Shown here: piece after piece, positions 38,101-60,719 of the stretch
How positions within the stretch are numbered: the first letter of the stretch is position 1
How the letters are laid out: every line of letters starts with the position of its first letter
Origin: Cycas panzhihuaensis
Taxonomy: Eukaryota > Plantae > Cycadophyta
Assembly: GCA_023213395.1 (NCBI GenBank)
Contig: CM041465.1
Coordinates: 157,859,741 to 157,923,740 of the forward strand
Length of the DNA stretch: 64,000 nucleotides
Direction: 5' to 3'
The notes under the pieces: generated by a model
The model's input: the letters and a program-made list of their open reading frames with translations, nothing else
What the model was told of the DNA's origin: nothing
The model's database searches: none
Made by a program: the position numbers and the translations under genes

Positions 38101-41100
38101 CAAATGACTTAAAGTTGGTACTTCACCACCACAACTAGGTCTTTTAGGATATTCCTCAAGGTCTTCCCCTAGTATGTGACCAAGATCATAACATTGACCT
38201 AGTAGTTGGAAGCAAACCTCCTTATATTCGACCATACTAGTATCCTTACTAGTAAAAGAATGAAATTGAACAACTAGTTTAAGAACTCCTTAATACTGAT
38301 ACTATTAGGGAAAGTAAAAGCACTTTTTCTACCTCGGTGATTTTAGTAAGAAAAAAGGATGGCTCATTTTGCATGTGTGTAGACTACCGTAAGCCCAATA
38401 AGATAACTATCAAAGATAAATTTCCTATACCAGTCATCGATGAACTCTTGGATGGACTCCATGGAGCAATGTTCTTCACGTCATTAGACTTGTGGTCAGG
38501 ATACCATCAAATTAGGATCAAGGCAGAGGATGTTTATAAAACTACATTTCGTACATATGAAGGATATTATGAATTTTTAGTCATGCCAACTGGCTTGACT
38601 AATGCCCCATCTACCATTCAAGGACTCATGAACAAACTCTTTTAGCCTTATTTAAGGAAGTTCATATTAGTATTTTTTTATGACATTATGATCTTCAGTC
38701 CTACATGGGAAGACCATCTTCAGCATGTTGATAAGGCATTACAGGTGCTTGCAGATAACCAACTTTATGCTAAAAATTTAAAATGTTAATTTGGGTAAAT
38801 AAAAATAGAATATTTGGGCCATATTATATCTTAAGAAGGAGTCAAGGTGAATCTTAAGAAAATTGGAGTTATCACGAAATGGCCTAAACCCAAAAATATC
38901 AAGGGCCTTCGTGGATTCTTAGGAATCACAGGGTATTATCGAAAGTTTGTTCAGGGTTATGCAAGGATCGTTTTCCCTTTAATCAATTTGTTAAAAAAGG
39001 ATTCCTTTAATTAAAATGATAATGCCTCTAAAGCATTTAAACACCTAAAGGTAGCTTTAACTACCACATCAGTCCTCGCAACACCAGACTTTATAAAGAC
39101 CTTCACCATTGAATGCGATGCATTAGGGCAACGCATTTGAGTAGTCTTAATGTAAGAAGGGAAACCTTTGGCCTTCGAGAGTCATCAACTTACAGCTAAG
39201 AAATAAGTCAAATCCACCTATGAGAAGGAGATGTTATCAATTCTCCATGTGGTTAGGAAATGGCGACTATTTATTGGGAACACATTTCCAAATTAAAACA
39301 GACCATGATAACTTAAAACATTTCTTAGCTCAAAGGATAACATCTGAGGAACAATAAAAATGGGTCACTAAAATGCAAGCTTTTGACTTTAAAATCATAT
39401 ATAAAAAAGGCAAGGATAATATAGCTATTGATGCTTTATCTTATAAGGAAGAAGGCTCTGCACTATATTCTATCACCATAGTCAATCCCTCTTGGACAGT
39501 AGTCGCCAAGCAAGAATGGGATCAAGACCCCTTTACAAAGCAGATCATTCAAGACCTTCAAGCTAGGATAGGGCATTCAACCTATTATACATGGTCTACA
39601 AATATTCTCTGGTGTAAGAATTAGATATATATATACCCTCACTCTATCCTCAAGGAGCAAATTTTATATGATGCACATGCCTCTCCAATAGCAGGTCACA
39701 TGGGGTTCTTACAGACATACCATTGCTTAAAACAATCTTTCTTTTGGAAGGGATAAAAAGGAGATGTAAAGAGATATATTTCCTCATGAAATTTGTCAAT
39801 GACATAAGACAAAAATAGTCAAGTCTCCAGGATTACTGCAACCCCTTCCCATACCAAATCAACGATGGGAAGAAATTTCTATAGACTTCATTGTGGGTCT
39901 TCCCAAGTCAGAAGGAAAAGATTCTATACTGGTGGTTATTGATAGGCTAATCAAATATGCTCATTTTTGTGGCATTCAAGCCACATATAAGGTAAAGCAA
40001 ATTGTTAAGATCTTTTTAAAGGATATACATAGGTTACATGGTATTCCCAAATGCATAGTCAGTGATTGAGACCCTAAGTTTACTAGCAACTTCTAGATGG
40101 AACTCTTCCATCTACTTGGTACTAAACTAATAATAAGCTCATCCTACCATCCATAAACATATGGTCAAACTGAGGTGGTTAACAAGTGTCTTGAAGGATA
40201 CCTTCATTGTTATGCTTCAGATAAGCAAGGCCAATGGTATCATTAACTTCCTTTAGTAGAATAGTAGTATAATACAACCTATCATGCATTAGTAGGAATG
40301 ACTTTGTTCTAAGTATTATATGGCTATGAACCACCCACACTTAAGAATTATGCCATAATTAGTTTTAAGGTTCAAGCAGTCAAGGAGCACATCTAACAAA
40401 CAACACTAATTCTTAAATCACTCAAGGAAAATCTAAACCTTACACAAAAATGAATAAAACAATAGGCAAATAAAGGGTGAAGTGCCCAAGCATTTCAACT
40501 AGGTGACTGTGTATACTTACAGTTATAATCGTACAAGCAGGCATCTCTTAAACGGGATGGGCAATATAAATTACAACCTCAATTTTATGGGCCTTACAAA
40601 ATTCTCAAGAAGATTGGTAAAGTTGCATATGCCTTGGACTTACCACCACCATCAAGGATCCATAATATCTTTTATGTTTCATATCTCAAGAGAGTAATTG
40701 AGCAGCAAGTATAAGTTCAAACAGAATTACCTATCTTAAATGAGGAGGGTCAACTCCAACTCATTCTAGAATGTATCACCGACCAAAGAATTCAACATCT
40801 ATGATTCATGCAAATCATTGAGTATCTCATCAAATGGAAACAACTTCCATGAGAAGATGCAACTTGGAACAATGAGCAATTTATCCAAGAGCATCCTAAG
40901 ATCACAAAGCTTTGAGGGTAAAACTTTTTAAAGGGGAGGACTTTGTTAGGGATCCAACCCCTAACTTACCTTCTCTTATATTCTCTTATATCTTCTACTT
41001 CTTCTCTCTCTTATCTTCTATTTCTTCTACTCCTTCCCTCTTCTTAATATCCTACATGCATAAGTAGAAGGTTGTGTAATAGTCATTGAGCACTATATAT

Positions 41101-41443: not shown

Positions 41444-44400
41444 TGTTGAGAATACAAGGTCCAACCCTTTAACCGCCACCAAGATCTATTACTTTCTTAC
41501 AACTAGTTACAGAAATCAAAATATAAAATTACATGCAAATTCTAAAATTAGAGATTATACAGTAAAAAGAAAATGAAAACCAAACATCACATGTGCACCC
41601 GATATAACGTGGTAAAACCCTAGCGATTGTCTTTGAGGAAACATCCACACAGGAAAGGTATCGATCTTTATTGCTACAGAATGGAGAAACAATACATCAT
41701 AGTTACAGAGTGCTCTCTGGAACAACAATCAGCTACCGCCCTCTTCACAGTACATTGTATAACATTACAACATAATAAGAAAAGCCTTAAAACGAGCTAC
41801 ATGAGAGGAACATCCAAGACCTAAGTCTTAACCGTAGAATCTAGGGTATTTGTATCAAACGACCCTGATTCTTTTTACATTTTGATAAGATTTACATGGC
41901 TAATTTTTTTGGGTCGGGGGCTATCGCCCCTGAACCCCCTCCTAGCGGGGGGCATTCCACGCTCCCCGCACCCCTCGGCCATGGGGGGCTCCTGCCCCCC
42001 TTGGAACCCCCCGAGAAAGATTAGGGACGGAAACCGCGTTGAAAACATGCCATACTTTTAGGCCTATAATTATTGTCACAATACCCAACAATCTCCACCT
42101 TGACAACAATTACCCACTACCTTTCCTGGATCCTTCATCACCTTTTCTGCAAGCCAAGAGAAGTCAAACACCATTTGAACTTCTCTAATGGTACTGGTTT
42201 TGTGAATATATCAGCACAATTCTGATTGGTATGAATCTTCTCAAGTGCCACTCCACCTGCTTCCACAACCTGTCTAACAAAATGGTACTTAAGAACAATA
42301 TGCTTTGTTCTACTATGATAAGTTGGATTCTTGGCTAGGTAAATGGCACTTTGACTGTCACAAAATACCTTTACATTTTCCTGTCTCCTTCCAAGCTCAA
42401 CCAATAGACCCTATAACCAGATTGCTTCTTTACAAGCATGTCTGCGGAGAACATATTCACTTCGTGGTTGTGATTACAATTGTGCTATGCAATTTGGATA
42501 TCCAACTAACTGGACCATTTGCAAGAGTAAAAACTTGACCTGAAGTAGACCTTCTTTTGTCAAAATCTCCTGCAAAGTCTAAATCGACATATCCACAAAC
42601 GTGATTACCTGTACCTCCAAAGGTGATGCAGTAATCACTAATGCCTCTCAAATATCAAAACACCCATTTCACTGCAGCCCAATGTTCCTTTCTTGGATTT
42701 GCCATAAACCTGCTAACTACATCGACTACATGTGAAATATCAGGTCTTGTACATACCATGGCATACATCAAACTTCCTACTGCACTGGCATAAGGCACAC
42801 AAGACATATAAGCCTTTTATTCTTCACTACTATGACTCATATTAGATGAAAGCTTGAAGTGGGAAGCCAATGGGATACTCACTGGTTTCACATTTGCCAT
42901 CCGAAACCTGGTTAGCACCTTCTCCACATATTTCTACTATGATAACCATAGCTTACCACTTTTCCTGTCTCTGTGTATCTCCATGCCTAAGATTTATTTT
43001 GCGGCTCCTAGATCCTTCATATCAAAAGTCTTAGCCAATTGAGCCTTTAGCTTATTGATTTCTACTATGCTCTTGCTTGCAACCAGCATGTCATCAATAT
43101 ATAACACCAAGATAATGAATAAGCCATTGTCTATAAATTTAAAGTAAACACAATGATCATACTCGCTTCTTTTAAAATTTTGGCTCTCCATAAAGGCATC
43201 AAACTTCTTGTACCACTGCTTGGGTGATTACTTCAGGCCATACAATGATTTCCTGAGCCTGCAAACAAGTCTTTTCCTGCCATCTTAAACAAACCCCTCT
43301 GGTTGATCCATATAGATCTCCTCATCTAAATATCCATGTAGAAAAGTTATCTTTACATCTAACTGCTCCAACTCCAAATCAAGAGAAGCTACTAATGCTA
43401 ACAGCACTCGAATTGAAACAAGTTTAACAACTAGTGAAAAGATCTCATGAAAGTCAATACCTGCTTTCTGTACAAAACCTTTTGCTACCAGTCGTGCCTT
43501 ATATTTATCAACCTTTCTATCAACATCTGTTTTCTTTTTTAAAACCCACATGTAACCAACAGTCTTCCTACCATGTGGAAGTTCTACCAAGTCCCATGAA
43601 TTATTTTTCTTCAAAGCATCTATCTCTTCCTGCATAGCCCTTATCCACTTCTCTCCATGGATATCATCTACTACTTCCTGATAACATGTGAGCTCACCAT
43701 CATAAGAAACTAAAGCAGTAGAAATATAAGGGTTGTACCTGTCAGGTGGATGACTAACTCGTGTAGATCTTCTAACTATTGGTAGAGGAGTGTCCACATA
43801 CTCCTATGAATCTGTTGTTGATTCGTCTTCAGAAAGATCTTCATGCTCTTCTGATTCCACAGATGGTTGCATTTCAAACTTAACTTGTTGATGCTCATCT
43901 TACTGCTCCTATTTCATTTCAGCTTCTACACTGTCTGATTTTACAAGGGGAGACTCATCAAATATGACATCTCTGTTAATGGTGATTTTGTGGGCAGTAG
44001 GATCCCACAACCTATATCCCTTCACACCATCCTTATCACCATAACCAACAAAGATATATCTCTTGGATTTTGGGTCTAACTTTGAACATTTACTTTTGTC
44101 GTCGAGCATAAGCATCACAACCAAAAACTTTTAAATTTGAATAATCACACGGATGTCCAGTCCATACCTCTTCAGGAATCTTGTAATCTATTGTAACTGA
44201 TGGTGACCTGTTTACCAGATAGCAAGTTGTTTGAACAGCTTCTGCCCATAAGTCCTGCTCCACTCCTGCATTACTTAGCATGCTTCTTGCTCTTTCCAAG
44301 AGTGTCCTATTCATGCACTCAGTAATGCCATTTTGCTGTGGAGTATAGCTAGTGGTCTTGTGTCTTTTGATCCTAACTTCTCTGCAATAGTTCTCAAACT

Positions 44401-46755
44401 CCAAGGAGTTGAACTCACCTCCATTGTCAGTTCTTAAACATTTGATTGTCTTACCAGTATTGTTCTCAACTAAAGCCTTGAATTGCTTAAACACATTGAA
44501 AACTTCAGATTTCCTTTTCAAAAAATAGACCCATACCTTCCTGGAGTAATCATCTATAAATGTGACAAAATATAATGATCCTCCACAAGATATTTTAGGA
44601 GCTAGTCCCCATACATCTGAATGTATGTAATCCAGAACGCCTTTACTAGTGTGACTCCCTACTTTAAACTTGAGTTTACACTGTTTTCCAAAAACACAAT
44701 GTTTACAGAAAGCCAAGTCTAAAAGCTGTAAGTTAGGAAGCAACTTATGGTTTATCAGCACCTTAAGTCCTCTCTTACTCATGTGCCCAAGTCTCTGATG
44801 CCATAACTGAGCTGGATCTTCTGTAGTTTTTGACACTGTAGCTGCTTGGCTAACATCTGTACTTCCCACTAAAATGTAAAGATTTCCTCTCTTTAAGGCT
44901 TTCATAACAACCAAGGTGCCCTTTGACACCTTTAGGACTCCTTCATGACCCGTATACTTAAAACCAACTAAATCTAATTCACCCAAGGAAATCAGATTCC
45001 TTTTCAAATCAGGTACATGTCTAACCTCAGTTAATGTTCTGACTACCCCATCAAACATCTTAATTCTGATGCTACCAATGCCCACTGTCTTACAAGAAAC
45101 TTTATTTCCCATAAGCACATCACCACCATTAAGAGGTTGGTATGATGAGAACCAACTCCTGTATGGACACATGTGGTGTGAAGCACCTGAATCTAATAAC
45201 CAGTCATGGTGATAATGAGAAATATTACAAGTAACCAAGACATCATCATCCATACCTTGATTTGACTCCACCTGATTCGCCTCCTTGGTAGGATCTTCCT
45301 TTTTCTGGAACTCCTTACTTTCGTAACAATCCTTCTTGAGGTGACCGGTCTTATTACAATGCTAACACCTGAGCTTACTCTTTTTGCTCTTTGACTTAGA
45401 TCTCCATGTATCCCTGGAGTTTTGTCCTCTCTCAAATGTTCTACCCCTTACTGCCATGGCTTCTGGTGTGGAGGTTTCAAGACTAGACTTCCTCTGCACT
45501 TCTTCCATTAGCAAAGCACTCACAACAAAGTCATATTCCAATTAATTTGTTGTGATAAAACTAATTGAGGTGACAATATTATCCCAGGATTCAGATAATG
45601 AGCATAACAGGGTAATTGCCTTGTCCTTATCCTCAATTTTAACATTGATACTAGTCAATTAACAAATAAGAGTATTGAAAATATTTAAATGGTCAACGAT
45701 TTTTGTACCTTCCTTCATCCATAATGAGTATAGTTGCCTCTTCAGGTAGATTTGATTCGTTACTGATTTGGTCATATCTGAGCCTTCCAACCGGGTCGTA
45801 ATCACCGCCATCTTTACTCCCCTGCGATGTTAAACAAAACTTCATTTGCCAAGTACAATCGTATTGTGCTAAGTGCCTTTTTGTCTAAATCATCTCATTC
45901 CTCATCGTCCATCCCTGCGGGTTTCTTCGACTTGCCTGCAAGGGCTTTGTACAAACCCTGTTGTACAAGAATATCATACGCTTTTAGCTTCCACAACTCG
46001 AAGTTGTTCTTACTATTGAATTTCTCCACCTCGAACTTTGCATTCACTAGTTTCTCCATTTGGTGTAGAAAATCTGACACCAAAACCTTCACAAACTCGT
46101 TGTAAGAAAATGAGTGGCTCTGATACCACTTGTTGAGAATACAAGGTCCAACCCTTTAACTGCCCCCAAGATCTATTACTTTCTTACAACTAGTTACAGA
46201 AATTGAAACATAAAATTACATGCAAGTTCTAAAATCAGAGATTATACAGTAACAAGAAAATGAAAGCCAAACATCATATGTGCACCCGATATAATGTGGT
46301 AAAACCCTAGCAGTGTACTAGGGAAACATCCACACAGGAAAGCTATCGATCTTTATTGTTGCAGAATGGAGAAACAATACATCACAGTTACATAGTGCTC
46401 TCTGGAACAACAATCAACCGCCGCCCTCTTCACAGTACATTGCATAACATTACAACATAATAAGAAAAGCCCTGAAACAGGCTACATGAGAGGAACATCC
46501 AAGACCTAAATCTCAACCGTAGAATCTAGGGTATTTGTATCGAATGACCCTGATTCTCTTTACATTTTGATAAGGTTTACATGGCCAAAATTTTTGGGTC
46601 GGGGGCTATATCCCCCCTCTAGGCGTTCACGCCCTCACTTCTAGCCAAGGGGGCTCCCGCCCCCCTTGGAACCCCCCAAGAAAGATTAGGGGGAGAAACC
46701 GTGCCGAAAACATGCCATAATTTTAGGCCTATAATTATTGTCACAATACCCAACA
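41444..46755 (-). mobile_element. Full-length Ty1/Copia element, Tnt1/Tork-like; the best preserved coding region in the window
   Basis: LTRs 41444-42090 and 46131-46755; TSD aaatg 41439-41443/46756-46760; PBS 46117-46128; PPT aggtggagat 42091-42100; gag AKFEVEKFNSKNNFELWKLK; WLLDSGASHHM; integrase ORF 44090-45271; RT LYIDDML; RNase H TKHIVLKYHFVR. Confidence 0.96.
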
Positions 46756-46865
46756 AAATGGAGTGATTATTAATTACATCTTAACTTGATTAGATTTTTA
46801 ATGGTGATGAACAAGAGCAAAAATTAGGTGTTTTATCTAAAAATTTATGGAATTTCTTATATATA

Positions 46866-49800
46866 TTTTTTCAAAGGTGAAGAGGAGAATTTATTAAATT
46901 ATAATCTTAAGAACAATACAATGAGCTGGGAAGCCCAGAATTAGGTGGGCATATTTACCTAATCTTTTACATGAAGAGCACTCAAAGTAGCAATATTAAA
47001 TTATAAATTATTCTTTAACATTCTTCGAAGACAAGTGAAGCAAGAATTATGAGATAGCCATAGCAAAATATCCTTCCTTATACACTTAAGTTTGGTTAAA
47101 GGATGGGACTACTTTTTGAAGGTAAGCTATAGTACAGATTTTCCAAATCTCATGTAAGGTGGTCTTAAGAAGCAGAAACCAGAGGTCAATTAAATGTCAT
47201 TGAGTCATAAACTAGATATAAATCATTGCCTAACTCCCTTTGATTAACCAAGAATAGAGGTGAAAGTTGTCATTACAAATATTAGTGTAGCCTTGGTCCA
47301 AACTAAAAATCTGAAAGATGGTATACCAAATGTCATGAATAAGAGGACAATGCCATCAGATGTGATCAAAACTATCCTCATGGGTGCTACAAATAATGTA
47401 ATATGATTAACAACTAATATTCCATTGATCCCAAGTATCCTAGAAAATAAAAGCTTTGTGCAAGATCCTCTAATCAAGAATATTGTATTTAGGTTAAGCA
47501 ATTTTCCACCATATCCATCCCCATTCTACTTGGAGTTGAGTATGATGAAATTGAAGACTATGAACTAAATAATAAAAATCAAAGGAATTGAAGACATACC
47601 CTCTAGATAAAAACCTAATGCCTTCCTCCTTCTCTAGATCTTAAGATGTAATAAAAGGATCAATTTACCTCATGAAAAATTGAGCTTTTCAGCCATCCGC
47701 AAAAGAGAAGTTTCAGGCTTAGGATTAAGTTCCAACAAGAGATTAGCAACATCCTTCCAATAGAGCTGCTCAAAGTCATGAAATTGAGCCATAGTAAAGT
47801 AATTGTAAGAACTAAAAATTTGAGCTAAAGGAGTGAGTTCATCTTGACTACCTAAAAGAGGCAAACCTAGAGGAAGCCATTTGTCCTTCTAAAAATTGAC
47901 CTGGCAACCAGTAGAACTAGGAGAAACAAGAGTATTATAGTGCACATTATCCCAGGTTGCCACCATATGATTCCAAATAGGAGCTCATTTGTTAAGAAAG
48001 CTGGCATTAACTAACTACTGCTTAGCATAATAACTAAAATAATATTTTATTCTAATAATACGGGCCCATTTATCATTTTCCCTATTCCAAAGGTCCCATA
48101 AATGCTTGGCACCTCTAACCTTAACTAAGATAAAGGGGTCTTTGACACCAAGACTACCTCGACCTTTATGATCTGACACCATACTCCATTTCATAGGATG
48201 AAAGGTTTTCAAATCAACATACCATGGCTTCCAAAGGAATCTTATAAGGAGACTTCAGACCACTAATAATACAACTTTAGGACCTTGAATAATTGACATA
48301 AGGTAATTTGGTAATTGGGAAAGAGTGGGTTCAATTAAGCTTCATCAACTGGATAAGTTAAGGGATCTAATGGGCCAAGTGTCCAACTTCTTTTTAATTT
48401 TTTGAACATAAGGCTGCCAATTAGAAATTTTTAATCTTGAGAGGCTCATAGGAATGCCTAGATATTTGAAGATAGTAGATCTTGGAGGAATAGGAATGCT
48501 GAGAGCTGATGCCAAATTAGATTGCATCTTTGTTTCTACTTCATTAAAAATAATGCTAGATTTACTTACATTAATAGACATCCCTACTGCGAGGCCAAAA
48601 GCCTTGAGTACTTAGCTCCAGATATTGATTTCTGTATATGAAGGGTGACCCAATAGAATGGTATCATCTGAAAAAATTTGATGTGTTATGATCTCAGATC
48701 CTTCAATAGAAGTACCTTGGAGAAGATCTATTGATTGGAGCCATAAATGGAGGGAAGAAAACCTTCCATAATAATAACAAAAAGATAAGGCAACAAAGGA
48801 TAGCCTTGATGAATTCCTCTACTCATATAAATAAGGCCATTAATTAAACCATTAATTTTTATAGCCATTGAAATCGAAGAGATCATAACTTTAATCAAAT
48901 TAATATAGTTCTATTGAAGTCTCTTTTGAACGAGAATAGCAAGAAAGAAATTCCATTCCGCAGTGTCATAAGCTTTATTGATGTCTAATTTAAAAATTAT
49001 AGCTTGTTACTTCTTTGTGCAAATAAAATAGAGAGCCTCAACAATCACAGTTATGTTGTCAGCTATACAATGCCCTTTAATAAAGGTAGTTTGATTCTCA
49101 TTGACAATATGAGGAAGGAACTCTTTAAGACGATTAGAAAGAACTTTGGCTATAATCTTGTATGAAGTATTACAAAGACTTATAGGTCTTGAGTGATGGA
49201 TGGAGGATGGAGTATTACTTTTAGGAATCAAGAAGGCTATGGTAGCATTGATAGCAAGGTTCATTCTACCTGATCAACAAACCTCTTCTGCCACTTCAAC
49301 TAATAGTTGTAGGACCTCATCAGAGTTAATAACTAATAGAAGCTCAACGAGAATACCATCAGGACCGGGGGATTTACCTTTGAGAAGCTTCAACATAATT
49401 TTTTGAATCTCCTCCTTAGTGATCATTCTATTAAGAGAAGCATTAAGGTTTCTATTACACTCCTCCAGAATAGGTTTCGCCTTTGAAAGAATAATTTAAA
49501 TAGCTTTGGCTCTATTCGAAGAGAACCTTGAGTGGTCCATAGCCTATCAAAATCATGAAAAAACTCAGACTAAATTCTATGATGCAAATATGTAATTTCC
49601 AATGAGGAAACCTATAAACACTTCAGAGGCCATTGTTATTGTATTGCTTTTGCATAATGGTTAAAAAATTTTGAATTCTGGTATGTGTGAAGTTTCCATT
49701 AGATATTTAACCATGCTTTCTATTTTTCATCCTCCTGCTTTTGCATAAGCAAAAAATGATTATTTAAGTTAGAAAGCCTTGACAGAAGCTCCACCGAGCC

Positions 49801-51795
49801 ATTACTTTCTTCAAACTACTTTGTACATCCTAGATAGTGACCAACAAAGAATCCTTGCGCTCTTCAAACTTACGTTTACAGTTTTTGCTAAAAATCTTGA
49901 TACGAGATATAATAATTGCATTCACCAAAATATATTGATAATGTGTAATTAAATGAGAGAGCAAGTTTGAAATATAAGCTCTATCAAGTCTTTCTGATAT
50001 GCAACCATTCCCCTACTGGTTATTAGACCATGTAAATCTTAGGGGACCCTTCCAAGGAAGCTCACTAAGACCTACAAAATCTTTAAGATTGACAAACATC
50101 ATATTATCCTTTGATAGTGTCTTTTAAACTTTCCACCTAATTTGTCGTTGGGAAATTCTATAAAGTTGAAGTCTCCTAAGAGTAAAATATGATCATGATT
50201 AGCCTGGTGATTATGAACAGTGCTTGCCAACATTTGCCATGAGTCCTATCTGACTCAAACATCAATAGAGGCATAAACTCCAATGATCCAACAAAAAAAT
50301 GATCCTTTTCTATTTTTAAATACAACCAGTCTTCGAAGGGACTTTTGATATACAAAAGCATCTTACACTAGTTATTTCAATAAATACATAGAACTCCAGC
50401 ATAATGGTCTAAGATAATTACTTTCCAATGAGTTAAAGGCTATATACTACGAGTTGTATGCATCATATCATTATCAGATACTATATCAGTTTCTGTCAAA
50501 ACCAAAAAGTGAGGATGATGATGCCAAACTATACGCTTTATCTCCAATTATTTACGAAAGTGAGGGGGACCAATACCCTTGATATTCCAAGCTATTGCAA
50601 AGATACTATTTCTGTCCATTTGGTTGAGAGGAATTGATGCAAGTTAAGGATTTGAGATAGGTATGTTGAGGGGCATTTTCGTTCATGGACACATATTGTT
50701 GAGTTTGATGGAAATTCACCTTGGGGAGGAATTAGCCTTTGAGTTTCTGGTACATACTCTAGCGACTCAACTTCTTCCATAAGCAAGTCGTCTAAATTCT
50801 CTTGAAAATGTCCATAATTAGGCGCGGTAGCTACTTCAGATGTTTGCCCTTAAAAATGTGAATATGCCTTTTACCTTTCTTTGATTGATCTCTAGACTCA
50901 TTAAGATTTGAATGCATAGACTAAGTACTTGAGAGGTGACCTTTGCCTTTATTATGCATCTGATTGGTGACAAGTGTCCATCCACCGTTTTCTCTTTCGT
51001 AAGGAATAACTGTATGCTAATGATGGGTAGTAGTATCCATGTGAGGCTACGATGTTCTTCACTATTAGAGGGGTTGTTTCCAACCAACTTCTCTTTTTCC
51101 TTATTGACCCTATCAATATTTGGCTGGGAGGGTGCCCTTTGGTCTAGGATAACTTAATCTCTCCATGGATCAAAACTAGGTGAGACGTGGAACAAGTGGC
51201 ATAATTTATGAATAGGCCCAATACTATGACATGCCGAGCATCTGAATAGAACTCTCTCATAATCCAGATTAATTTTGATGGACCTATTTGCAACTTTAAT
51301 AAAAAGATGCTCTTTTAGTGGTTTATTCATATCTAACTCAACACAAACTTTAGCCACCCCCTAGTAGTGTGATCCAAAGTGTTCGAGTCTAACTTGATAA
51401 CCTTGCCCATCATAGATCCTATTTTAATTAATCATTCTTGCTTTCTAAATTCATCCAATAAAAAAGGAAACTGAATCCAAACAGGGATTTTCAGAGGCCC
51501 TGGGTTACTTGGGTCGAATATAGGAGACCACTATTAGAGAGCTAAACCCGAATTTCTTATAAACCAAGGACGCCCATAAAAACCTTTTTCTAAATATGTT
51601 GTATTAAAGAAGAAAATATTAAAGAAGCCCTTTTTTTTAGTTCAAAGGTAAGTTGACTCGAGATAATAGGGCCCCAAACCACTTTCACCCATTCTTCCAG
51701 AGACCATGTAGGAGGTTAAAGATTATTAAATTTACCAATGAGGGTTTTAGCCTAAAGCTCCACACATATACTCTCTACGTCCTCAACTGGGAGGG
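46866..51795 (-). mobile_element. L1-clade LINE, 5'-truncated in ORF1, decayed
   Basis: ORF1 DUF4283-like region plus AKVCVELDMNKPL..CSACHSIGPIHKLC knuckle; ORF2 from 50619 (IAWNIKG endonuclease); RT RPISLCNTSYKIIAKVL, KLDINKAYD, HQIFSDD, KYLGIPM; AATAAA and short A-tail at ~46866-46895. Confidence 0.9.
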
Positions 51796-52892
51796 TAATA
51801 GTATTAGTATTAGTATTAGTATCATAGTATTACTTATAGTTTGTTTATGTATTTCCATTCTATAATCATAGAGTGAAAATAAGAGAGATGCTTTGATTAG
51901 AATCCAACATTAATAACAAATGTACCATTATGTTTAAAGTAATAATTTATATATTTATCAATTGTGAAATGCTTGAATTTTTTTTTTTCCATAACCCTTT
52001 AGTGATATATAACCCTTGTATAACATTAAAATGAATGATTTATGTTATTAAAAATAGGTCCACACATTGCCAAATAAACTTATATAATGGAACACTCTAT
52101 AGCCACATCATATACAAAATAATCAATTATTTAATGGTAGTGAATCACTATCTGATGGTGGTGAATCATTAACTTTCTAGATTTTTTATTTTAAGTTTTA
52201 AGATATAATTTATAATTCATTGATGGATTTATCATAAGTTGACAACATCATAAATATTGACATATGTTTTATAAATATTAATATAGATCTAAAGTTAGCA
52301 AGTAACATGCATGATATTTATTGTTGTTCTTTATGTATATATTGTTGGAATATAATGCTTAATTTATGGGATATATGTTTACTGTTTAAGGTGATAACAT
52401 TGTGTTCATGTATTATAAGGGTATTAGTGTTATAGTTGGGGTTAATTACAACTTAAAGTTGTTAGCCTAAGTGTGTGGGGTCTATTGTGCACACACTATT
52501 TTATAATGCCATTATAACTTTGATCATACAAGGTGCCATGTGTCACCTTACATGATCAACTCATTATATTCTTTAAAATGGTTTTATATTGCTATATGTA
52601 CACACTCAATATGAAATACAATATGTAGATATATACTAGTTCTTTGTTATTTATTTTTTGTTTTTCGTATATTGAGTGTGTGCATATTTACATTTTGGTA
52701 TCTGAGTAAGTTTTGAGAGGCAACCATCCTCGAGATGGCACCTCTAAAACCTAGATGTGTGAGTGATTGTATGTACAAGGTTTTAATTGAGAGTTTTGAA
52801 GTCCATGCCCAAATCATCATCCTTTTTTTTTTTTTTCAAAGCCATTTCAAATGCCCTATGTTAGGGTTTCAAAAAAAGGTTTTCTTCCACTA

Positions 52893-53265
52893 ATGGAGAC
52901 TGTTGAAGAGAATGTAGCAAAGAGGGTGTTACAAGAGCATGTTTGAGGTTGAAACTTTGGAAACCCTAGCAATAGCAACCACACTGAGGTTGATATACGT
53001 AATTCAATATATAGGAGTATTGGAAGGAGTAGAATCCTCATTACTAGAGCCAACAACACCTCTCGTGAATCATCAACCCTTGCCTTTTCAGTGCCCAAAG
53101 CCAAAGACGATGACGAAGAAATTATTGATAAGGTATCTAAATTACTCATAGAAGGCACTCTGGATTTAAATAAATCCTATCCAATTCTATGCAGGTTAAC
53201 TCCCAGTCACATCGACAAAGTTCTAGTAAGATCAAATTTCGTCAACTCTACATGCACCTTGTTTA
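52893..53265 (+). pseudogene. N-terminal fragment of a PPR-like gene (PPR-A)
   Basis: METVEEN..EIIDKVSKLLIEGTLDLNKSYPILCRLTPSHIDKVL resembles the pre-repeat region of P-class PPR proteins; two stops; different frame from PPR-B. Confidence 0.5.
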
Positions 53266-53407
53266 CATCATTTAATCCATAAATTAGGGTATATTTCCTC
53301 AACTGTGCAGACACCCTTTTTACATCATTTAATCCATAAATTGGGGTATATTTCCTCAACTGTGCAGCCACCCTTTTTACATCATTTAATCCATAAATTG
53401 GGGTATA
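53237..53407. repeat. 57-bp tandem triplication
   Basis: Units start at 53237, 53294, 53351 (tttcctcaactgtgcagccaccctttttacatcatttaatccataaattggggtata). Confidence 0.93.
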
Positions 53408-54855
53408 GGAACAACGTCAATTCCACCCTCGTTGCCCAAGTGATTATGTGAGGCCTACAACATCACCATGCTCTTACCGTGGCATTCCTCCATTAGGGAG
53501 TGCATTGGATGGGTTTTACTCATAACTCTTCCTCTTGCGAAGCACTAAGGAAATGCCTTCTCCATGCAAAATAGTTTATAGCAATAGACAAACTCCTCAA
53601 GCAAATAAAACTTCGCAAAGTAGAGTTAACATCCTTTGCATTCAATAGTATTAGCTCCACATAGATACCAGGTAATAATCTCAAGATCCATATAAAACAT
53701 TCAGAGAAATGAAGATACTAGGTCACATACTGAATACTGTGTGCAATTATCTACTGGGCAGTCTTGTCTCGAATGGCCGTATTGGTCTAACCAAGGTCCT
53801 ATATTCTGAAATGCGGTCTGATGACATTCCATTGAATGCAGTTAGCTTTGGCATTTTCATTGGACATTTTTGTAGGACGAGGAACCCTAAAATTGCCCTG
53901 GGATTTTCAGATGAAGAGAAGCAAATCCAATATTTTTTGGGATCGATTGTAGCTACATTAATGATTTGCCATGCATCTAAAATTGAAGAAGCTTGGTGGG
54001 TGCTAGAGAGAATGAGGGTAAAAGGCTGTAAACCAGACTTCATTGCATATCAAATGGAAATTAAAGCTCTCTGTAGGGGGGGCAAATTTGACAAGGCCAA
54101 GGAGATTTTGAAATGGAAACGAAAATTGGGTGTAGCTCCTCATGCTGTTGAGCACAAGGAATTTATGTTTGCACTTATTATGACAAGAAAAATCCAAGAG
54201 GCTCGTGAGATTGTAGAATTCATCAGAAGTGCAGGTTTCCCTCATAACGAAGATGTTTTTAATGTATTGATTTGTTCCATTTCTAACATAGACCCATATG
54301 CTACTTTTTTTCACTTTTTAAAGTAATGATAACTGCCAATCATCTGCCTACCAACCTCAGCCTCTGTAATTTAATTCGTTGGCTTTGTAATCATGGTAAG
54401 GTAGATAAGATTTGGCATTTCTTTCTAGACTTGTCCCATATGGGATTTGTCACAGACACACCCACTTACAATGTCATGATTTTTTTTTTTTTACTTTTCA
54501 AAACTGGTAAAATAAAGGAAGCTTACAGAATATTCAAAGAGATGCCACAAAATCAATAGAGTCTTGATGTGACTACCTATAATAAATTGATGAATTCCTC
54601 TTGCGAAGCAGGCATATTGCGTTCGGCTAAAAGGCTTTGGGATGAGATGTTTAGAAAAGGTTACCATCCCAATACTCAAACTTATTATATTCTCATTTTA
54701 AACTTTTCAAAGATTGGAGAGGTTCATGAGGTTGAAAGGTTTTTAAATATATGTTGTAGAAAGATGTAGTTCCTGATACACACATATAAATTTTTAATTG
54801 ATGGGTTGATCAAGGCAAAAGAATTAAACAAGGCTTATGAAATTTGTAATTTCTT
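53263..54855 (+). pseudogene. P-class pentatricopeptide repeat pseudogene (PPR-B), resembling the Arabidopsis At5g14080 group
   Basis: LGYRNNVNSTLVAQVI..HHHALTVAFLH*..GFTHNS; GSIVATLMI; CKPDFIAY; KRKLGVAP; ISNIDP; AKRLWDEMF; several stops and frameshifts; orthology recalled from memory, not searched. Confidence 0.85.
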
Positions 54856-55199
54856 GACTCTAATTTTTTATGAATAGAGTGTTCTTGTCAGTGACTTTGC
54901 GAAAATCTTAGAAGACTTCACATATCCTTTAGAACCAATAATACAACCTGCACATGTGTTGTCTATTCGTCAGTATATGTAGGATTGATAAAGATTAATT
55001 TTTTGTAGAAGTACTGTAGTTATTATTATTATAGTAGCCATGTTTGACAAATTTATAGGAATGAAGATGCATTTTCTATACTATAATTATCTCAGATTAT
55101 ACCAAGCTATAAAGATATTGAGTTTGGAGGTACAAATAATTTGCCCTCCTCATTGCCATTTGTAATGGTGTTTTTCTTTTTCGTGTGGTAGATGGCATG

Positions 55200-55430
55200 A
55201 ATGCCACTTCCTTCACTAGAGATTGTATTGACATTTACAATAAATTGATGTTCTATTTAATGAGTTTACCTTTGCCGACATTCTCTCGGTATATGCCAAT
55301 TTGGCAATTTTAGTCATGTGATTTTCTAGTAGCAGTATTGAGGATGCTTGTAAAGTGTTTGATAAAATGTTCAAACAAACTGTAGTAGCGATGATTACAA
55401 TGACTTTAGGATATGCATAGATGAGGATTG
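55200..55430 (+). pseudogene. PLS-class PPR fragment (PPR-C) with an internal deletion
   Basis: NEFTFADILSVYANLAIL (L-motif start) joined to SIEDACKVFDKMFKQTVVAMITMTLGYA* (S-motif end and P-motif start). Confidence 0.75.
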
Positions 55431-55727
55431 ACTGCTTAAAGGCTAGTTCCTGCACCCACTTTGATTGATTGAGATTCATCTCAGTCAAAAGAATAGAAGT
55501 TGTGTTTATAAGAAATTAAACATTATGGGGGGATGTTGGAATATAATGTTTAATTTATGGGTTATATGTTTAATGTTTAAGGTGATAACATTATGTTAGT
55601 ATATTAGAAATGTATTAGTGTCATAGTTGGGTTAGTTAGAAGTTAAAGTTGTTAGCCTAGGTTTGTGGGGTTTATTGTGCACACACTATTTGTAATGTCA
55701 TTGTAACATTGATCATACAAGGTGCCA

Positions 55728-55895
55728 AAGGTTAGGCATTGGGGTGCACTGGTAGGTATCTACCCTACGATATTGGAAGTCCCAGGGTTGATCCCTACAG
55801 GGGGTTGTAGGGGAGAACTAGATGAAATGTTGACAAACCTCAACAAACAAGGATTCAATTCCATCTACTCAATACATACCATTAAAAAAAAAAAA
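55728..55895 (+). mobile_element. tRNA-derived SINE (168 bp) inserted in the 3' LTR
   Basis: 16-bp TSD atcatacaaggtgcca 55712-55727/55896-55911; A12 tail; A-box-like ggtgcactgg and B-box-like gggttgatccc; absent from the 5' LTR. Confidence 0.88.
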
Positions 55896-57889
55896 ATCAT
55901 ACAAGGTGCCATGTGTTACCTTGTATGATGAACTCGTTATATTCTATAAAATTGTTTTATATTGTTATATGTACACACTCAATATGAAATATAATATATA
56001 GATATATACTAGTTTTTTATTGTTTCTCTTATATTGAGTGTGTGTATATTTACATTTATTAATTGAGAAGTAGTTTTAATTTATCATCTTTAGTGTTGTT
56101 CTATTCATGTTTATTGATTGAGGAAATACTTTTTTTTTACATACCCTTTTAATAATATTATTTTTTTTATAGCGTTAAAATGAATAATTCACATTATTTT
56201 ACATTAGGCATAAACATTGACAAATTAAAATGATAAGAGTTTCCCATAGCCATGAGAACTAGATTCTCTAATGATTGTGAATTACTAAATTTGCAATCTT
56301 ATTATTATGGTTTTAGATATCATTCCTAGTTTGTTAATGTGTTGCCAATTTCTTATTATAGATTTTAAAAAGTCATATATGCTTTGACTTAGATTTAACA
56401 TTAAAGGGTAATATTGTACCATTATATTTATTGTTTCTATTTATGTATTTATCAATTGATAAATATTTGTTCTTTGTAGATAATAATATTATTTATCTTA
56501 TAACCTTATAGTAATATTTAATCATTTCATGGTGTCAAAATGAATGATGCCTTGTATTGAATGTAATTGTAAACATTACAAATTAAAAATTATAGAATAG
56601 AGTCTTATATACCCATATCATATGCAATTTTACCACATTCTTTTATAACAATGAATTTATGATTTTTGCAGGTCTCCTATCTTACTATTTTAGATATCAT
56701 TTATAGTTTACCAAAGCATTTTCATTCTTTGATCGTAGATTTGAAACCATTAAGGGTACATTGACATAGATACCAACATGGAGGAATATACCATCATGTT
56801 AGGTGTATCACTATTTTTGTATTTACTAATTAAGAAACATTTCAAATTTTAAGCATAATAATTATAGATAAACTCTAAGTTAATATAACTCCATACTTAT
56901 ATCAAAGGTATATTAAATCAAGATACAAGTTTATAATGGATAAATTTATAATATAATCAAAATACTATTAAAAATAAATATAAATGTTATTATTTGCTCT
57001 ATGTTATCTTACTTGAGCATGATTCTACTTTGTTTCAATATGATTTAACTCTTAATTCCCCATTAAATAAATAGTATGTTCTTATAAATAATGTTTTAAT
57101 TAAGGTCAATAAAATGAATATTTTAAATGGTATCATCATAACTATGACTTGAGGTATAATGACATATATTTTATTAATGAATTTAAATGTTATCTATTTT
57201 GAAATGATAATGAAAATAGATATAATTTACATTAGATAATACCTCCTTAACAAACATGGCCTCATCCTCCAAAAACAAAATTGCTCTCATACTCCCCTTA
57301 CAAAAAAGAAAAGAGTAAACAAGAAAGAATTAAGAGAATAAAAGAAAGATGGTTTTTTAGTGTTTAGATCTATGAAAAGATTCAATGTGGTGCTTCTAAA
57401 TGCACTACTATAACAAGGATTTTATTCCTTAACATTTAAACCTATCATGGCAATTGCCATGGACTCCTACTAATCTACTAGCTAGAAAACAAATAACTTA
57501 ACCCACTCCCCTTGAGTTAGTTACTTGTCTTTAGCCTTTTACTCAAAGTTATTACTTTTGTTTTTTTTTTTTAAGATTATAATAAAAGAAAAAAGCACAT
57601 GTTAATAAAAATGGGGGAAATGTCTCCAAACATTTACTTAATTTGAATTGATCAAAATATTTTAAAGACTTTAAAAAAAGATAACCGCTAATAAAATGTG
57701 AAAAAATAAAAATAAAAGTAAAAATCGCCACATAAATGCTTTAATCACTCAATCTTGCTTATCTAAATATTCTCTAAGTTGTTTATCTTTAATCTCTTAC
57801 TCAAAATCATTGATCTTTAAAAAAGTGATTGCCATCTCTATTACAAAGTTGAAAGAGTGAAACAGTTTACAAAAGGAAGGATAAAAAGA

Positions 57890-58423
57890 AAGTCGTCAGC
57901 GTGGAATTTAGATTTGGTGAGAGAGATTCATAAAAAAGGAGGTGTCAATAAAATGTTGAAATTGAGAGCCGCCATAACGGTTTTTAATTTTGATGAGACG
58001 ACAAGATGAAGTTTCTGGATCTGGCCACCTGGACCTGACGTGTTCAGATGAATTGGCATTGCTATGACGTGGCTGGTACGGAAAGAGGCAAACGGTAATA
58101 AAATTTGAACTTCGTTCATTGCTGGTCATAGCTCGTACCAATTCATCTCTGATTAATGTATTTTATCTTGTTAAGCAGCTCTTTTCTCTGAACCCGTGCA
58201 CCTCGAACACACGGCCGAGACTATTCCAGGAGTCAGTTGGTCCACAGCAGATTCTATAGTGTATAGGGATTTGTTTTAAAAAAAATACAGGATAAGGCAT
58301 TTCAAGAGAGGTGCGATTTGTAGAATTTGGTTGAGTTAATTGGGCGCTAGAGAGACAGAAGGGTTTAGGATGAAGGGTTTTTAACAGGTAATTGAACAGA
58401 TATGGGGTTAGCAGGAAAGGAAG
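57890..58423 (+). promoter_or_regulatory. CpG-retaining promoter/5' region of CAP-H2 with candidate cell-cycle motifs
   Basis: AACGG MSA cores 57976-57980 and 58091-58095; TGACGTG(G) 58036-58042 and 58065-58072; TTTGAA 58104-58109; CpG abundant compared with flanking TEs. Confidence 0.5.
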
Positions 58424-58595
58424 ATGACAGGCAACGATAAAGAGGAGAGCAGGTTTTCTCACCTTTTACAGTCCAATAGAGATTTAGCCGCTAACTGGTG
58501 CGTCGACGTAGCACGGCAGCTTGACGAGTATTTAGCGGAGCTTTATTCTGCTTCTCTATTGGACGATGGTTACGCTTCTTTAAATTTTGCAGAAG
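58424..58595 (+). CDS. CAPH2: Condensin-2 complex subunit H2 (kleisin-beta), coding exon 1
   Basis: MTGNDKEESRFSHLLQSNRDLAANWCVDVARQLDEYL..SLNFAE is the conserved CAP-H2 N-terminus; GT donor at 58596, phase 1. Confidence 0.93.
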
Positions 58596-58686
58596 GTGAT
58601 TTATTTTTCATTGAACGGCTGCAATAATAATACTAATAGATGTTGCTGTCATTGTTCGTGTTGAATCTAATGTCATTGTTATACAG

Positions 58687-58786
58687 CGGCTCTATTGATT
58701 CAAGGATCAATTCAGATATATAGTAGAAAGGTTGAATATCTGTATTCGCTTGTGCTGCAAGCGTTAGAGTTCATAGCGCAAAAGAG
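58687..58786 (+). CDS. CAPH2: Condensin-2 complex subunit H2, coding exon 2; gene probably continues beyond the window
   Basis: 91-bp GT..AG intron 58596-58686; spliced product [38 protein letters not shown]; donor gtcagt at 58787. Confidence 0.93.
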
Positions 58787-60719
58787 GTCAGTCCCCCGTC
58801 TCTGTTTTCTAAGGTTTTGTGTGATTCATTAGGCATTGAATATCAGAAATTTTAATGAAGAATGCACACTTTAATATTGGCTGAGCACTTTAATATTGTT
58901 GCATACTTTAATTGAAATAAGAATTTATTGTAGTGTGCTTAAGCGTATGGTAAGAGTGGTGCTTCCTTCCTCGTAATGGAGGTGTTACTTTCTTTTTGCT
59001 TTCTTAACTAGCATAAGCCTGTGTTCCATGTAATAGTACCTGGTAATAGGAATCATGGCATCGATTCATCGGCTGGCTAATCTCACAGTAGTATCACTTT
59101 TTCACTCTCTCCCAAGTTTCCAATAAATCCTTTCTGTCTTCATGGTGAGCTTATGATTTCCTTTTAAAGTGAAAGTATCTTAAACAGGGGGTGAAGATGG
59201 AATTTCACCTCACAGGCCAAAACCAGCACCTGAAGGAGGTATGTGATGGGCAGTAGTCACTGTTTTTGAGCATGCTACTCCTTATAGGTTTTGAACCTCT
59301 TATGTGCATCTAGAGAGAATACACACAAACCAGTGCACTATGCCTAAAGTGTCATAGCCCAGACAATATTATTGCAAATAATTCCCAAGTGGTATTTAAA
59401 AAACATGCTAAAATCAGAGGGGTTTGAATAATGATTGACAAAGGAGCATTTTGGAAATTATATGTATCCTCCTTGCTCTGGTTCATTAGCAAATTGGCCC
59501 TTTAAATGTTTTCTTGTTATTTCCTTGCCCATTGCAGAAACAGAAGTTCCTAATGTATCAAGGGGTGAAATCAGAGCAAGGCATCTACCTAGGTCCTTTG
59601 TAAATGATGATTATCTCTTTGAAATTGATTATGAAGCAATTTAGTCTGCCAAACCTGAATGGAATTCTCTTGCTTTGGAAGGTAATACTAAATTGAACTG
59701 GAATATCTTTTATTGTAAGTTGCACAGGCTGCTGTATCATATTCAGAAGTGAAAAATCCTGAGCTATTAGAATCAAATGCATGAATCCTTGAAGTGCAAG
59801 TGGTGTTAGATGTGAGTGTGATTTAGATTACAAACAAAATCCTCCACATTGCTAGAGGTTAGAACATATGACACATTTCAAGCAATGTGCAACATGTTTT
59901 GAGAACCTTGCTGCACCATATGTACGCTGGAAGGCCATGCACTGGCCATCTATCATGTTTAGGTTCTGCAACAGTTTTGGGTATTGGTGGTTATAATTAT
60001 AATACATGAATGTTGGTTATCATTTTCACCCATAAACAAGATGGTCCTTGATGCTTCCTTATCTAATGGAATTTGAATTTGTTGTAGTGAGCAGTTAGGC
60101 ACTCTGTTCAGAATCAAGTCTTGTTGGCCAAGGGCTTTTCCGTACCCCAGGAAAAAGTTTTGGGATTGCCCGGAACTTCCCTCCTTTCAAGCCCATTGCA
60201 TGCAGAACTGATGTTTTATGTCTTACTGATTTTAGTCCTAGCTTCCAAGCACTAATCCCTATGATTCACTGATTTGGTGGTCTGAGGTCTGCTGGGCACA
60301 GGTGGGGCTCACGCAACTTGGCTTCTGAAAATTGTGGTTTGCAGCAGGGGTTAATGTGGCATATTTATCTGCATGATTCGGGCAATAAAAAAGTATAAAA
60401 CTTGGAGCAGAGCTTTTGGCTTCAATGTGTGGGAAATGTCCACAACTGGAAAACTTAGAAACATGGACCCAGATCTGATATTGCTCCAGTTTTGTTATTA
60501 AAAAAAAAAAAAAAAGATCAAAGGCAACATCTGCCCTGAACCAAGGTTTTCTGTGAAATTGTGTGAAACAACCTTAAAGAGTCCATTCTTATTTGCAGTG
60601 TAATCTTTCCAATCAGATTATAAGATGCATTGATTTCTACATAACGAGCATATGAATTTGACTGCAGCAGACAAACATTGAATATAATATCAGGGAACAA
60701 TCTGATTCTATTGAAAGTA

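What the first reader, a model, noticed from the sequence alone, without database searches (positions are those of the whole stretch)
52343..56054. LTR retroelement whose cargo is cellular PPR genes instead of gag-pol
Seen: paired ~350-bp LTRs, an iMet PBS directly after the 5' LTR, a PPT directly before the 3' LTR, and a 5-bp TSD (tatat/tttat). Removing the element restores the flanking repeat motif tttatgta-tttat-taattg, so it inserted as one unit. The 2.8-kb interior lacks gag/IN/RT and holds ~1.6 kb of a P-class PPR gene plus other PPR pieces. Known: LTR elements can transduce host mRNA by template switching (maize Bs1 is the classic case), and seed-plant PPR genes are largely intronless, with retroposition proposed for their expansion. 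Inference: this is a fossil of a vehicle that amplified PPR genes. About 11% LTR divergence makes it old.
Basis: partly seen in the sequence, partly recalled or inferred. Interest (0 to 1): 0.85.

Follow-up and report, generated by a model that had tools for sequence, protein, structure and literature searches.

The report
Dead LTR retroelement carrying PPR fragment
This is a real but long-dead, protein-less LTR retrotransposon in a large plant genome whose interior holds a broken, truncated copy of one host PPR gene; this kind of gene-fragment capture is already well documented in plants, so it is ordinary.

Summary
The structure is real. It has two 350-bp LTRs (TG...CA, 10.7% diverged, K2P 0.116), an initiator-Met primer site 3 nt after the 5' LTR and a short G-run before the 3' LTR. 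A 5-bp target duplication (TATAT/TTTAT) is backed by an 'empty-site' paralogue in the local flanking repeat, so it inserted as one unit. The 2.84-kb interior has no detectable gag, protease, integrase or RT. Its only recognisable content is one sense-strand block (53365-54850). This block matches positions 30-528 of 654 of the conserved P-class PPR family named At5g14080. It is broken by 2 frameshifts and 5-6 stops and lacks both ends of the protein. Gene-fragment capture by LTR elements, PPR fragments included, is published for rice, sorghum, maize and gymnosperms. First readers of this scan noted this same stretch once more, and many similar cargo-carrying LTR elements elsewhere in this genome. 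Interest is low.

The parts
52338..52342 (.). left copy of the 5-bp target-site duplication (TATAT; one change from TTTAT)
   Evidence: aligns to the same 5 columns as the right copy on the paralogous repeat units
52343..52692 (+). 5' LTR, 350 bp, TGTTGG...TTTACA
52696..52707 (+). primer-binding site of initiator-Met type (TGGTATCTGAGT, 10 of 12)
   Evidence: lies 3 nt after the LTR end
52708..53235 (+). leader and unassigned interior, including a T16 run at 52824-52839; no family match
53236..53407 (+). 57-bp unit repeated three times (92% match), lying in the N-terminal part of the PPR-derived sequence
53365..54850 (+). fragment of an At5g14080-type P-class PPR gene. Profile positions 30-142, 134-354 and 350-528 of 654 fall in three successive frames. 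There are 2 frameshifts (near 53690 and 54314) and 5-6 in-frame stops.
54851..55526 (+). unassigned interior tail; no protein family. The PPR-like look of 55322-55417 is not significant.
55527..55533 (+). polypurine-tract-like GGGGGGA abutting the 3' LTR
55534..56054 (+). 3' LTR (353 bp of LTR plus the nested 168-bp insert)
55728..55895 (+). later SINE-like insertion with an A13 tail inside the 3' LTR, flanked by a 15-16-bp duplication ATCATACAAGGTGCCA (55712-55727 and 55896-55911)
56055..56059 (.). right copy of the target-site duplication (TTTAT)

Best explanation
This is a decayed, non-autonomous LTR retrotransposon, probably mobilised by Ty1/copia-type enzymes supplied in trans. It is 3.54 kb long, or 3.71 kb with a later SINE-like insert. 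It integrated once, as a unit, 2.4 kb upstream of a CAP-H2 gene, into a degenerate local repeat. In place of gag-pol its interior carries a 1.5-kb sense-oriented piece of the host's At5g14080-type P-class PPR gene, truncated at both ends. Shown: the element's ends, its single-unit insertion, the absence of gag-pol, the identity and extent of the cargo, and its broken state. Inferred: the PPR piece was picked up before the last round of transposition. The most likely route is reverse transcriptase switching from the element's RNA to a co-packaged host mRNA and back, which yields sense-oriented inserts. The piece then rode along as dead freight and has decayed neutrally since. It has no function today.
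For: Element ends and single-unit insertion:
- LTR pair, TG...CA ends, PBS and G-run.
- The rejoined flanks match an uninterrupted paralogous unit across the joint, and both pentamers map to one TTTAT.
- Neither LTR has its own duplication: the interior sides read TTTTG and GGGGA.

No gag-pol:
- Pfam on 49 interior pieces finds PPR families only.
- 120 Copia proteins give no hit better than E 0.019 in the element, against 202 hits in the control.

Cargo:
- Three collinear sense-strand matches to a profile of 73 At5g14080 orthologues (194, 167 and 50 bits) cover positions 30-528 of 654.
- Best identities are 42-43% to named At5g14080 proteins.
- It has 5-6 stops and 2 frameshifts.
- A simulation at half the LTR distance predicts 2.7 +/- 1.6 new stops, the same order as observed.

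Context:
- The literature documents such captures (PMC3726574, PMC13317346, PMC13477047).
Against: - No second copy of this LTR or cargo was seen: none in the window, and none in two metagenome scans.
- Capture before transposition is therefore inferred only from the cargo's position between leader and PPT.
- The parental gene was not found, so RNA-level and DNA-level capture cannot be told apart.
- The TSD is imperfect (4 of 5) in AT-rich DNA, and the PPT is only 7 nt.
- The Copia assignment rests on the PBS type and LTR termini alone.
- There are slightly more stops than the simple model predicts (P(>=6) = 0.05 at 5.8%). The cargo may have been dead before this insertion.
Confidence: 0.72

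Rival explanations
1. The PPR piece entered an already integrated non-autonomous element at the DNA level, as filler DNA in double-strand-break repair, by gene conversion or as a nested insertion. On this reading it never travelled with the element.
For: No sister copy with the same cargo is known. About 520 bp of unassigned sequence lie upstream of the PPR block and about 680 bp downstream. A 57-bp triplication sits at the 5' edge of the block, which shows local DNA-level rearrangement.
Against: There is no poly(A) tail and no target duplication around the PPR block. Its sense orientation is what RNA-level capture predicts. First readers of this scan noted many LTR elements with host-gene cargo in this genome (unchecked). 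That suggests a capture process tied to the elements rather than a one-off repair event.
Confidence: 0.15
2. One reading: the element is a fossil of a vehicle that multiplied PPR genes and so contributed to the expansion of the PPR family.
For: PPR sequence sits inside a complete LTR frame, in sense. Other first-reader notes report PPR cargo in other LTR elements of this genome (unchecked).
Against: The cargo lacks the start and the last ~126 positions of the protein and has no long ORF. Its source family appears under one name per species across angiosperms in the hit list, consistent with a low-copy conserved gene rather than an expanding one. In rice and sorghum the PPR domain is common among captured genes but under-represented relative to its share of the proteome (PMC3726574). 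No amplified copies were seen.
Confidence: 0.04
3. Two independent solo LTRs, or a recombinant of two elements, happen to flank a resident PPR pseudogene.
For: The TSD is imperfect, and the flanks are repetitive AT-rich DNA.
Against: The PBS sits right inside the 5' LTR and the G-run right inside the 3' LTR. Neither LTR has its own 5-bp duplication. The rejoined outer flanks match an intact paralogous unit. No PPR signal lies outside the LTRs: the one tblastn hit at 51205-51354 (E 6.6e-4) gets no Pfam support.
Confidence: 0.03

Closest known systems
Maize Bs1 and other gene-transducing plant LTR retrotransposons (PMC13317346; Jin and Bennetzen 1994; Elrouby and Bureau 2001, 2010, as cited there)
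   Same: An LTR-bounded element whose interior holds intron-free-looking fragments of host genes rather than a full gag-pol. None of the fragments is a full-length ORF.
   Different: Bs1 carries pieces of three unrelated genes and yields an expressed chimeric ORF. Here only one host gene is demonstrable, there is no long ORF, and expression is untested.
LTR-captured genes of rice, sorghum and maize (Jiang and Ramachandran 2013, PMC3726574)
   Same: Full-length LTR elements with PBS and PPT that enclose host genes. PF01535 (PPR) is one of four domains most often found in such cargo in both species, and many captured copies are pseudogenes.
   Different: That survey counted annotated genes inside LTR pairs. 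Here the cargo is an unannotatable fragment, and the host is probably a non-flowering seed plant (unverified).
TE-captured exon fragments in gymnosperm giga-genomes (PMC13477047)
   Same: Copia and Gypsy LTR elements carrying single host-gene fragments. That paper reports about 400,000 captured fragments per genome on average.
   Different: None in kind. This would be one more instance if the host is a gymnosperm.
Non-autonomous LTR elements (TRIM, LARD, TR-GAG)
   Same: LTRs, PBS and PPT without pol, so mobilised in trans.
   Different: Too large for a TRIM, too small for a LARD, and no gag for a TR-GAG. The interior is mostly captured host sequence rather than family-specific non-coding sequence.
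LINE-mediated processed pseudogenes (retrocopies)
   Same: A dead, intron-free-looking copy of a host gene.
   Different: There is no poly(A) tail and no target duplication at the PPR block's own edges, and it lies inside an LTR frame.

Membership tests
LTR retrotransposon (structural definition) | Pair of direct long terminal repeats with TG...CA ends | tested here: met
   350-bp LTRs, E 1.6e-66 and 2e-52, TGTTGG...TTTACA
LTR retrotransposon (structural definition) | tRNA primer-binding site just inside the 5' LTR and polypurine tract just inside the 3' LTR | tested here: met
   PBS matches 10 of 12 bases of the iMet word, 3 nt from the LTR. The PPT is only GGGGGGA, so it is weak.
LTR retrotransposon (structural definition) | 4-6-bp target-site duplication at the outer edges | tested here: met
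   TATAT/TTTAT (4 of 5); both map to one TTTAT in uninterrupted paralogous repeat units
Autonomous LTR retrotransposon | gag and pol (protease, RT, RNase H, integrase) coding capacity | tested here: not met
   no such Pfam family in any interior piece, and no significant tblastn hit from 120 Copia proteins
Ty1/copia superfamily | Domain order INT before RT in pol; RT phylogeny | not testable with these tools
   No pol is present. Only the iMet-type PBS and the TGTTGG...ACA termini (shared with the neighbouring Copia) hint at Copia.
Gene-transducing LTR element (Bs1-like) | Host-gene sequence between the element's own PBS and PPT | tested here: met
   At5g14080-type PPR, profile positions 30-528, at 53365-54850
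Gene-transducing LTR element (Bs1-like) | Cargo lacks the parental introns (RNA-mediated capture) | not testable with these tools
Gene-transducing LTR element (Bs1-like) | Cargo transposed with the element (sister copies, same joints, different sites) | not testable with these tools
   No other copy in the window; two metagenome scans blank; the genome was not searchable
At5g14080-type P-class PPR protein | Collinear match to the orthologue profile | tested here: met
   50 + 194 + 167 bits in three collinear stretches
At5g14080-type P-class PPR protein | Complete uninterrupted reading frame | tested here: not met
   positions 1-29 and 529-654 absent, 2 frameshifts, 5-6 stops
LINE-mediated processed pseudogene | 3' poly(A) and flanking target duplication at the copy's own ends | tested here: not met
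   no A-run after 54850 and no direct repeat bounding 53236-54850

The most novel reading that the evidence does not exclude
The element may be one member of a genome-wide set of non-autonomous LTR families that regularly load sense or antisense host mRNA pieces into a fixed interior slot, as many first-reader notes for this genome suggest. PPR transcripts would be recurrent cargo. Such elements would then be a main source of PPR pseudogenes, and of small RNAs against PPR genes, in this plant.
Probability: 0.1. Interest if true: 0.5.

Novelty: new member of a known kind. Interest (0 to 1): 0.2.

Why it matters
It matters little on its own. It is a cleanly delimited example, with an internal empty-site control, of an LTR element that replaced its coding region with a host-gene fragment. 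Suppose the whole genome showed that this LTR family carries different cargo in different copies, or that PPR fragments are picked up far more often than their share of the transcriptome. The family could then serve to study how reverse transcriptase template switching shuffles host sequences in giant plant genomes. It gives no evidence on how functional PPR genes multiplied.

Tried and rejected
- **Parental gene, direct search:** the 205-aa ORF searched in the 5.8-billion-protein set gave nothing, because the length filter excludes full-length PPRs.
- **Parental gene, wider searches:** the representative library and a profile of P0002 plus three cargo pieces gave only orthologues at 43% identity or less. 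No same-species parent was found.
- **Metagenome scans:** two scans with LTR words conserved in both LTRs were blank.
- **Earlier findings by sequence:** look-ups with the LTR and with the cargo were blank, which means nothing.
- **C-terminal 126 positions of the PPR in the tail (54851-55533):** only chance-level tblastn hits and no profile hit. A by-eye match (SVLVSDF...) was rejected for that reason.
- **Extra PPR pieces:** 52953-53279 and 55140-55417 get no Pfam hit even at E 10, and the ESM Atlas scored 0.79 or lower.
- **tRNA origin of the SINE-like insert:** ARAGORN and Rfam found nothing.
- **Neighbouring Copia (41444-46760) as autonomous partner:** no nucleotide similarity to this element; only the generic TGTTGG...ACA termini are shared.
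- **Organism:** not established. The best TE hits are unnamed or Pinus taeda proteins at 62-75% identity. GC is 29-37% outside the TA arrays. Another note reports a flagellar gene fragment in this genome (unchecked). Together these only suggest a non-flowering seed plant.
Full report
**Observation**

The region contains a genuine pair of direct repeats. The stretch 52343-52692 matches 55534-55727 (88.3% over 196 bp, E 1.6e-66) and 55896-56054 (84.7% over 170 bp, E 2e-52). The pairwise alignment shows why the 3' copy is 521 bp long. It is interrupted by a 168-bp insert (55728-55895) that ends in thirteen A and is flanked by a 15-16-bp duplication, ATCATACAAGGTGCCA. This is a later SINE-like retroposition into the LTR.

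Over 337 ungapped LTR columns there are 23 transitions and 13 transversions, giving p = 0.107 and K2P = 0.116. The implied age is about 4.5 My at 1.3e-8 per site per year, or about 26 My at 2.2e-9. The host, and so the rate, is not established.

**Ends of the element**

- The LTRs start TGTTGG and end TTTACA.
- Three bases after the 5' LTR lies TGGTATCTGAGT, which matches 10 of 12 bases of the initiator-Met primer word. The window has 11 such words at 2 or fewer mismatches against 3.8 expected by chance. Several of them are exact and belong to other Copia-type elements.
- Directly before the 3' LTR lies GGGGGGA, a short polypurine run.
- The outer flanks read TATAT and TTTAT.

A 4-of-5 match means little in AT-rich DNA, but the flanks offer a better test. 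They belong to a degenerate local repeat. Rejoining them without the element gives a sequence that matches an uninterrupted unit (56420-56468) across the joint, at 84% over 49 bp with E 1e-9. In the four-row alignment both pentamers fall on the single TTTAT of the two paralogous units.

Neither LTR has a duplication of its own. The interior sides read TTTTG and GGGGA. The element therefore inserted once, as a unit, and the two-solo-LTR reading is excluded.

**Interior (52693-55533)**

All 49 stop-to-stop pieces of 28 aa or more, on both strands, were scanned against Pfam. Only PPR families appear, and no gag, protease, RT, RNase H or integrase. As a second test, 120 Copia proteins were run with tblastn. 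They give nothing better than E 0.019 in the element, but 202 hits in the Copia that lies at 41444-46760 of the same window. The element is non-autonomous.

**The cargo**

- ORFs at 53709-54323, 54326-54556 and 54569-54766 carry PPR repeats, with PPR_2 E-values of 5.7e-18, 7e-13 and 1e-11.
- In the 1.84-billion representative library the best collinear matches are 500-770-aa P-class proteins.
- A profile search named the family: 'pentatricopeptide repeat-containing protein At5g14080', found under that name in many flowering plants. The best identities to the cargo are 42-43%.
- I built a profile from 73 full-length orthologues (654 positions) and ran it against the six frames, with X at stops. 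It matches positions 30-142 at 53365-53703, 134-354 at 53676-54317 and 350-528 at 54311-54850.
- These three matches lie on the + strand in three successive frames. No part of positions 1-29 or 529-654 is found anywhere in the element.
- Along this path there are 2 frameshifts and 5-6 in-frame stops.
- A 57-bp unit is triplicated at 53236-53407, inside the N-terminal part of the PPR-derived sequence.
- At5g14080 itself is a P-class protein with chloroplast or dual localisation and no assigned function (PMC3858439).

**What is not there**

- The stretch 52953-53279 contains an LTPSHIDKVL-like motif.
- The stretch 55322-55417 contains IEDACKVFDKM and looks PPR-like by eye.

Neither gets a Pfam hit even at E 10. 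The profile gives only a 2-bit match at 55307-55387. The protein atlas scores 0.79 or lower. About 520 bp of unassigned sequence lie upstream of the PPR block, and about 680 bp downstream.

**Mechanism**

The cargo sits between the element's leader and its polypurine run. It is in the same orientation as the element's transcript and has no poly(A) tail or duplication of its own. This fits capture during reverse transcription, by a switch from the element's RNA to a co-packaged host mRNA and back. That is the route proposed for Bs1 and reviewed in PMC13317346. The fit is an inference. Without the parental gene, neither intron loss nor the joints can be examined.

A simple simulation at half the LTR distance predicts 2.7 +/- 1.6 new stops in 500 codons, against 5-6 observed. 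The cargo has decayed at least as long as the LTRs and may already have been dead when this copy inserted.

**Why the 'vehicle that amplified PPR genes' reading fails**

- The cargo lacks both ends of the protein, so it could not have seeded a working gene.
- Its source is a conserved gene that appears under one name per species, not a member of an expanding PPR subfamily.
- No additional copy was found.

**Comparison with what is known**

- Gene capture by plant LTR elements has been known since Bs1.
[quoted passage not shown] PF01535 (PPR) was among the four commonest domains in both species, yet under-represented relative to the proteome, and many captured copies are pseudogenes (PMC3726574).
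- A 2026 study reports on average about 400,000 TE-captured gene fragments per gymnosperm genome, with Copia and Gypsy examples (PMC13477047).
- First readers of this scan flagged this same stretch once more, and flagged dozens of cargo-bearing LTR elements elsewhere in this genome. One follow-up judged such a case known and common. Those notes are unchecked, and I did not test them.

**Context**

- The element ends 2.36 kb upstream of the first coding exon of a CAP-H2 gene. The CNDH2_N domain matches with E 1.2e-16, and the exons lie at 58412-58624 and 58671-58829.
- The host is not identified. GC is 29-37% outside the TA arrays. The chromosome piece spans well over 200 Mb, judging from the distances quoted. 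The best named TE hits are from Pinus taeda at 62-70% identity. These point to a large-genome, probably non-flowering seed plant.

**Verdict**

This is a real but ordinary, dead, non-autonomous LTR element with one captured PPR gene fragment, a new member of a known kind.

Noticed in passing
window 55728-55895 (duplications at 55712-55727 and 55896-55911): 168-bp SINE-like insert with an A13 tail and a 15-16-bp target duplication inside the 3' LTR. It has box-A/B-like words by eye, but ARAGORN and Rfam see no tRNA. There is no other copy in the window.
   Followed up: partly
window 41444-46760, minus strand: Copia element with ~650-bp LTRs (92-94% identical), an exact iMet PBS at 46117-46128, and ORFs with Pol_BBD, gag_pre-integrs, rve and RVT_2. 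It is younger than the PPR-carrying element and unrelated to it at the nucleotide level.
   Followed up: partly
window 25802-25813 (+), 35581-35592 (+), 1966-1977 (-): Further exact or near-exact initiator-Met primer-binding words, probably marking other Copia-type elements. Their interiors were not examined.
   Followed up: no
window 58412-58624 and 58671-58829 (+): First coding exons of a condensin-II CAP-H2 gene (CNDH2_N, E 1.2e-16). The LTR element lies 2.36 kb upstream.
   Followed up: partly
window 51837-52117, 56327-56627 and about 56695: A degenerate local repeat (67-84% identity) surrounds the insertion site. Its nature is unknown: an old tandem array or another decayed element.
   Followed up: partly
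window 53236-53407: 57-bp unit triplicated (92% match) within the PPR-derived sequence. It repeats the peptide PFLHHLIHKLGY and arose either in the parent or after capture.
   Followed up: partly
window 38337-38642 (+) and 48348-48611 (-): RVT_1 (LINE-type reverse transcriptase) fragments.
   Followed up: no
window about 10000-18400: Very AT-rich stretch (GC 13-20%) with long spurious ORFs in all frames. These are the TA arrays noted by other first readers.
   Followed up: no
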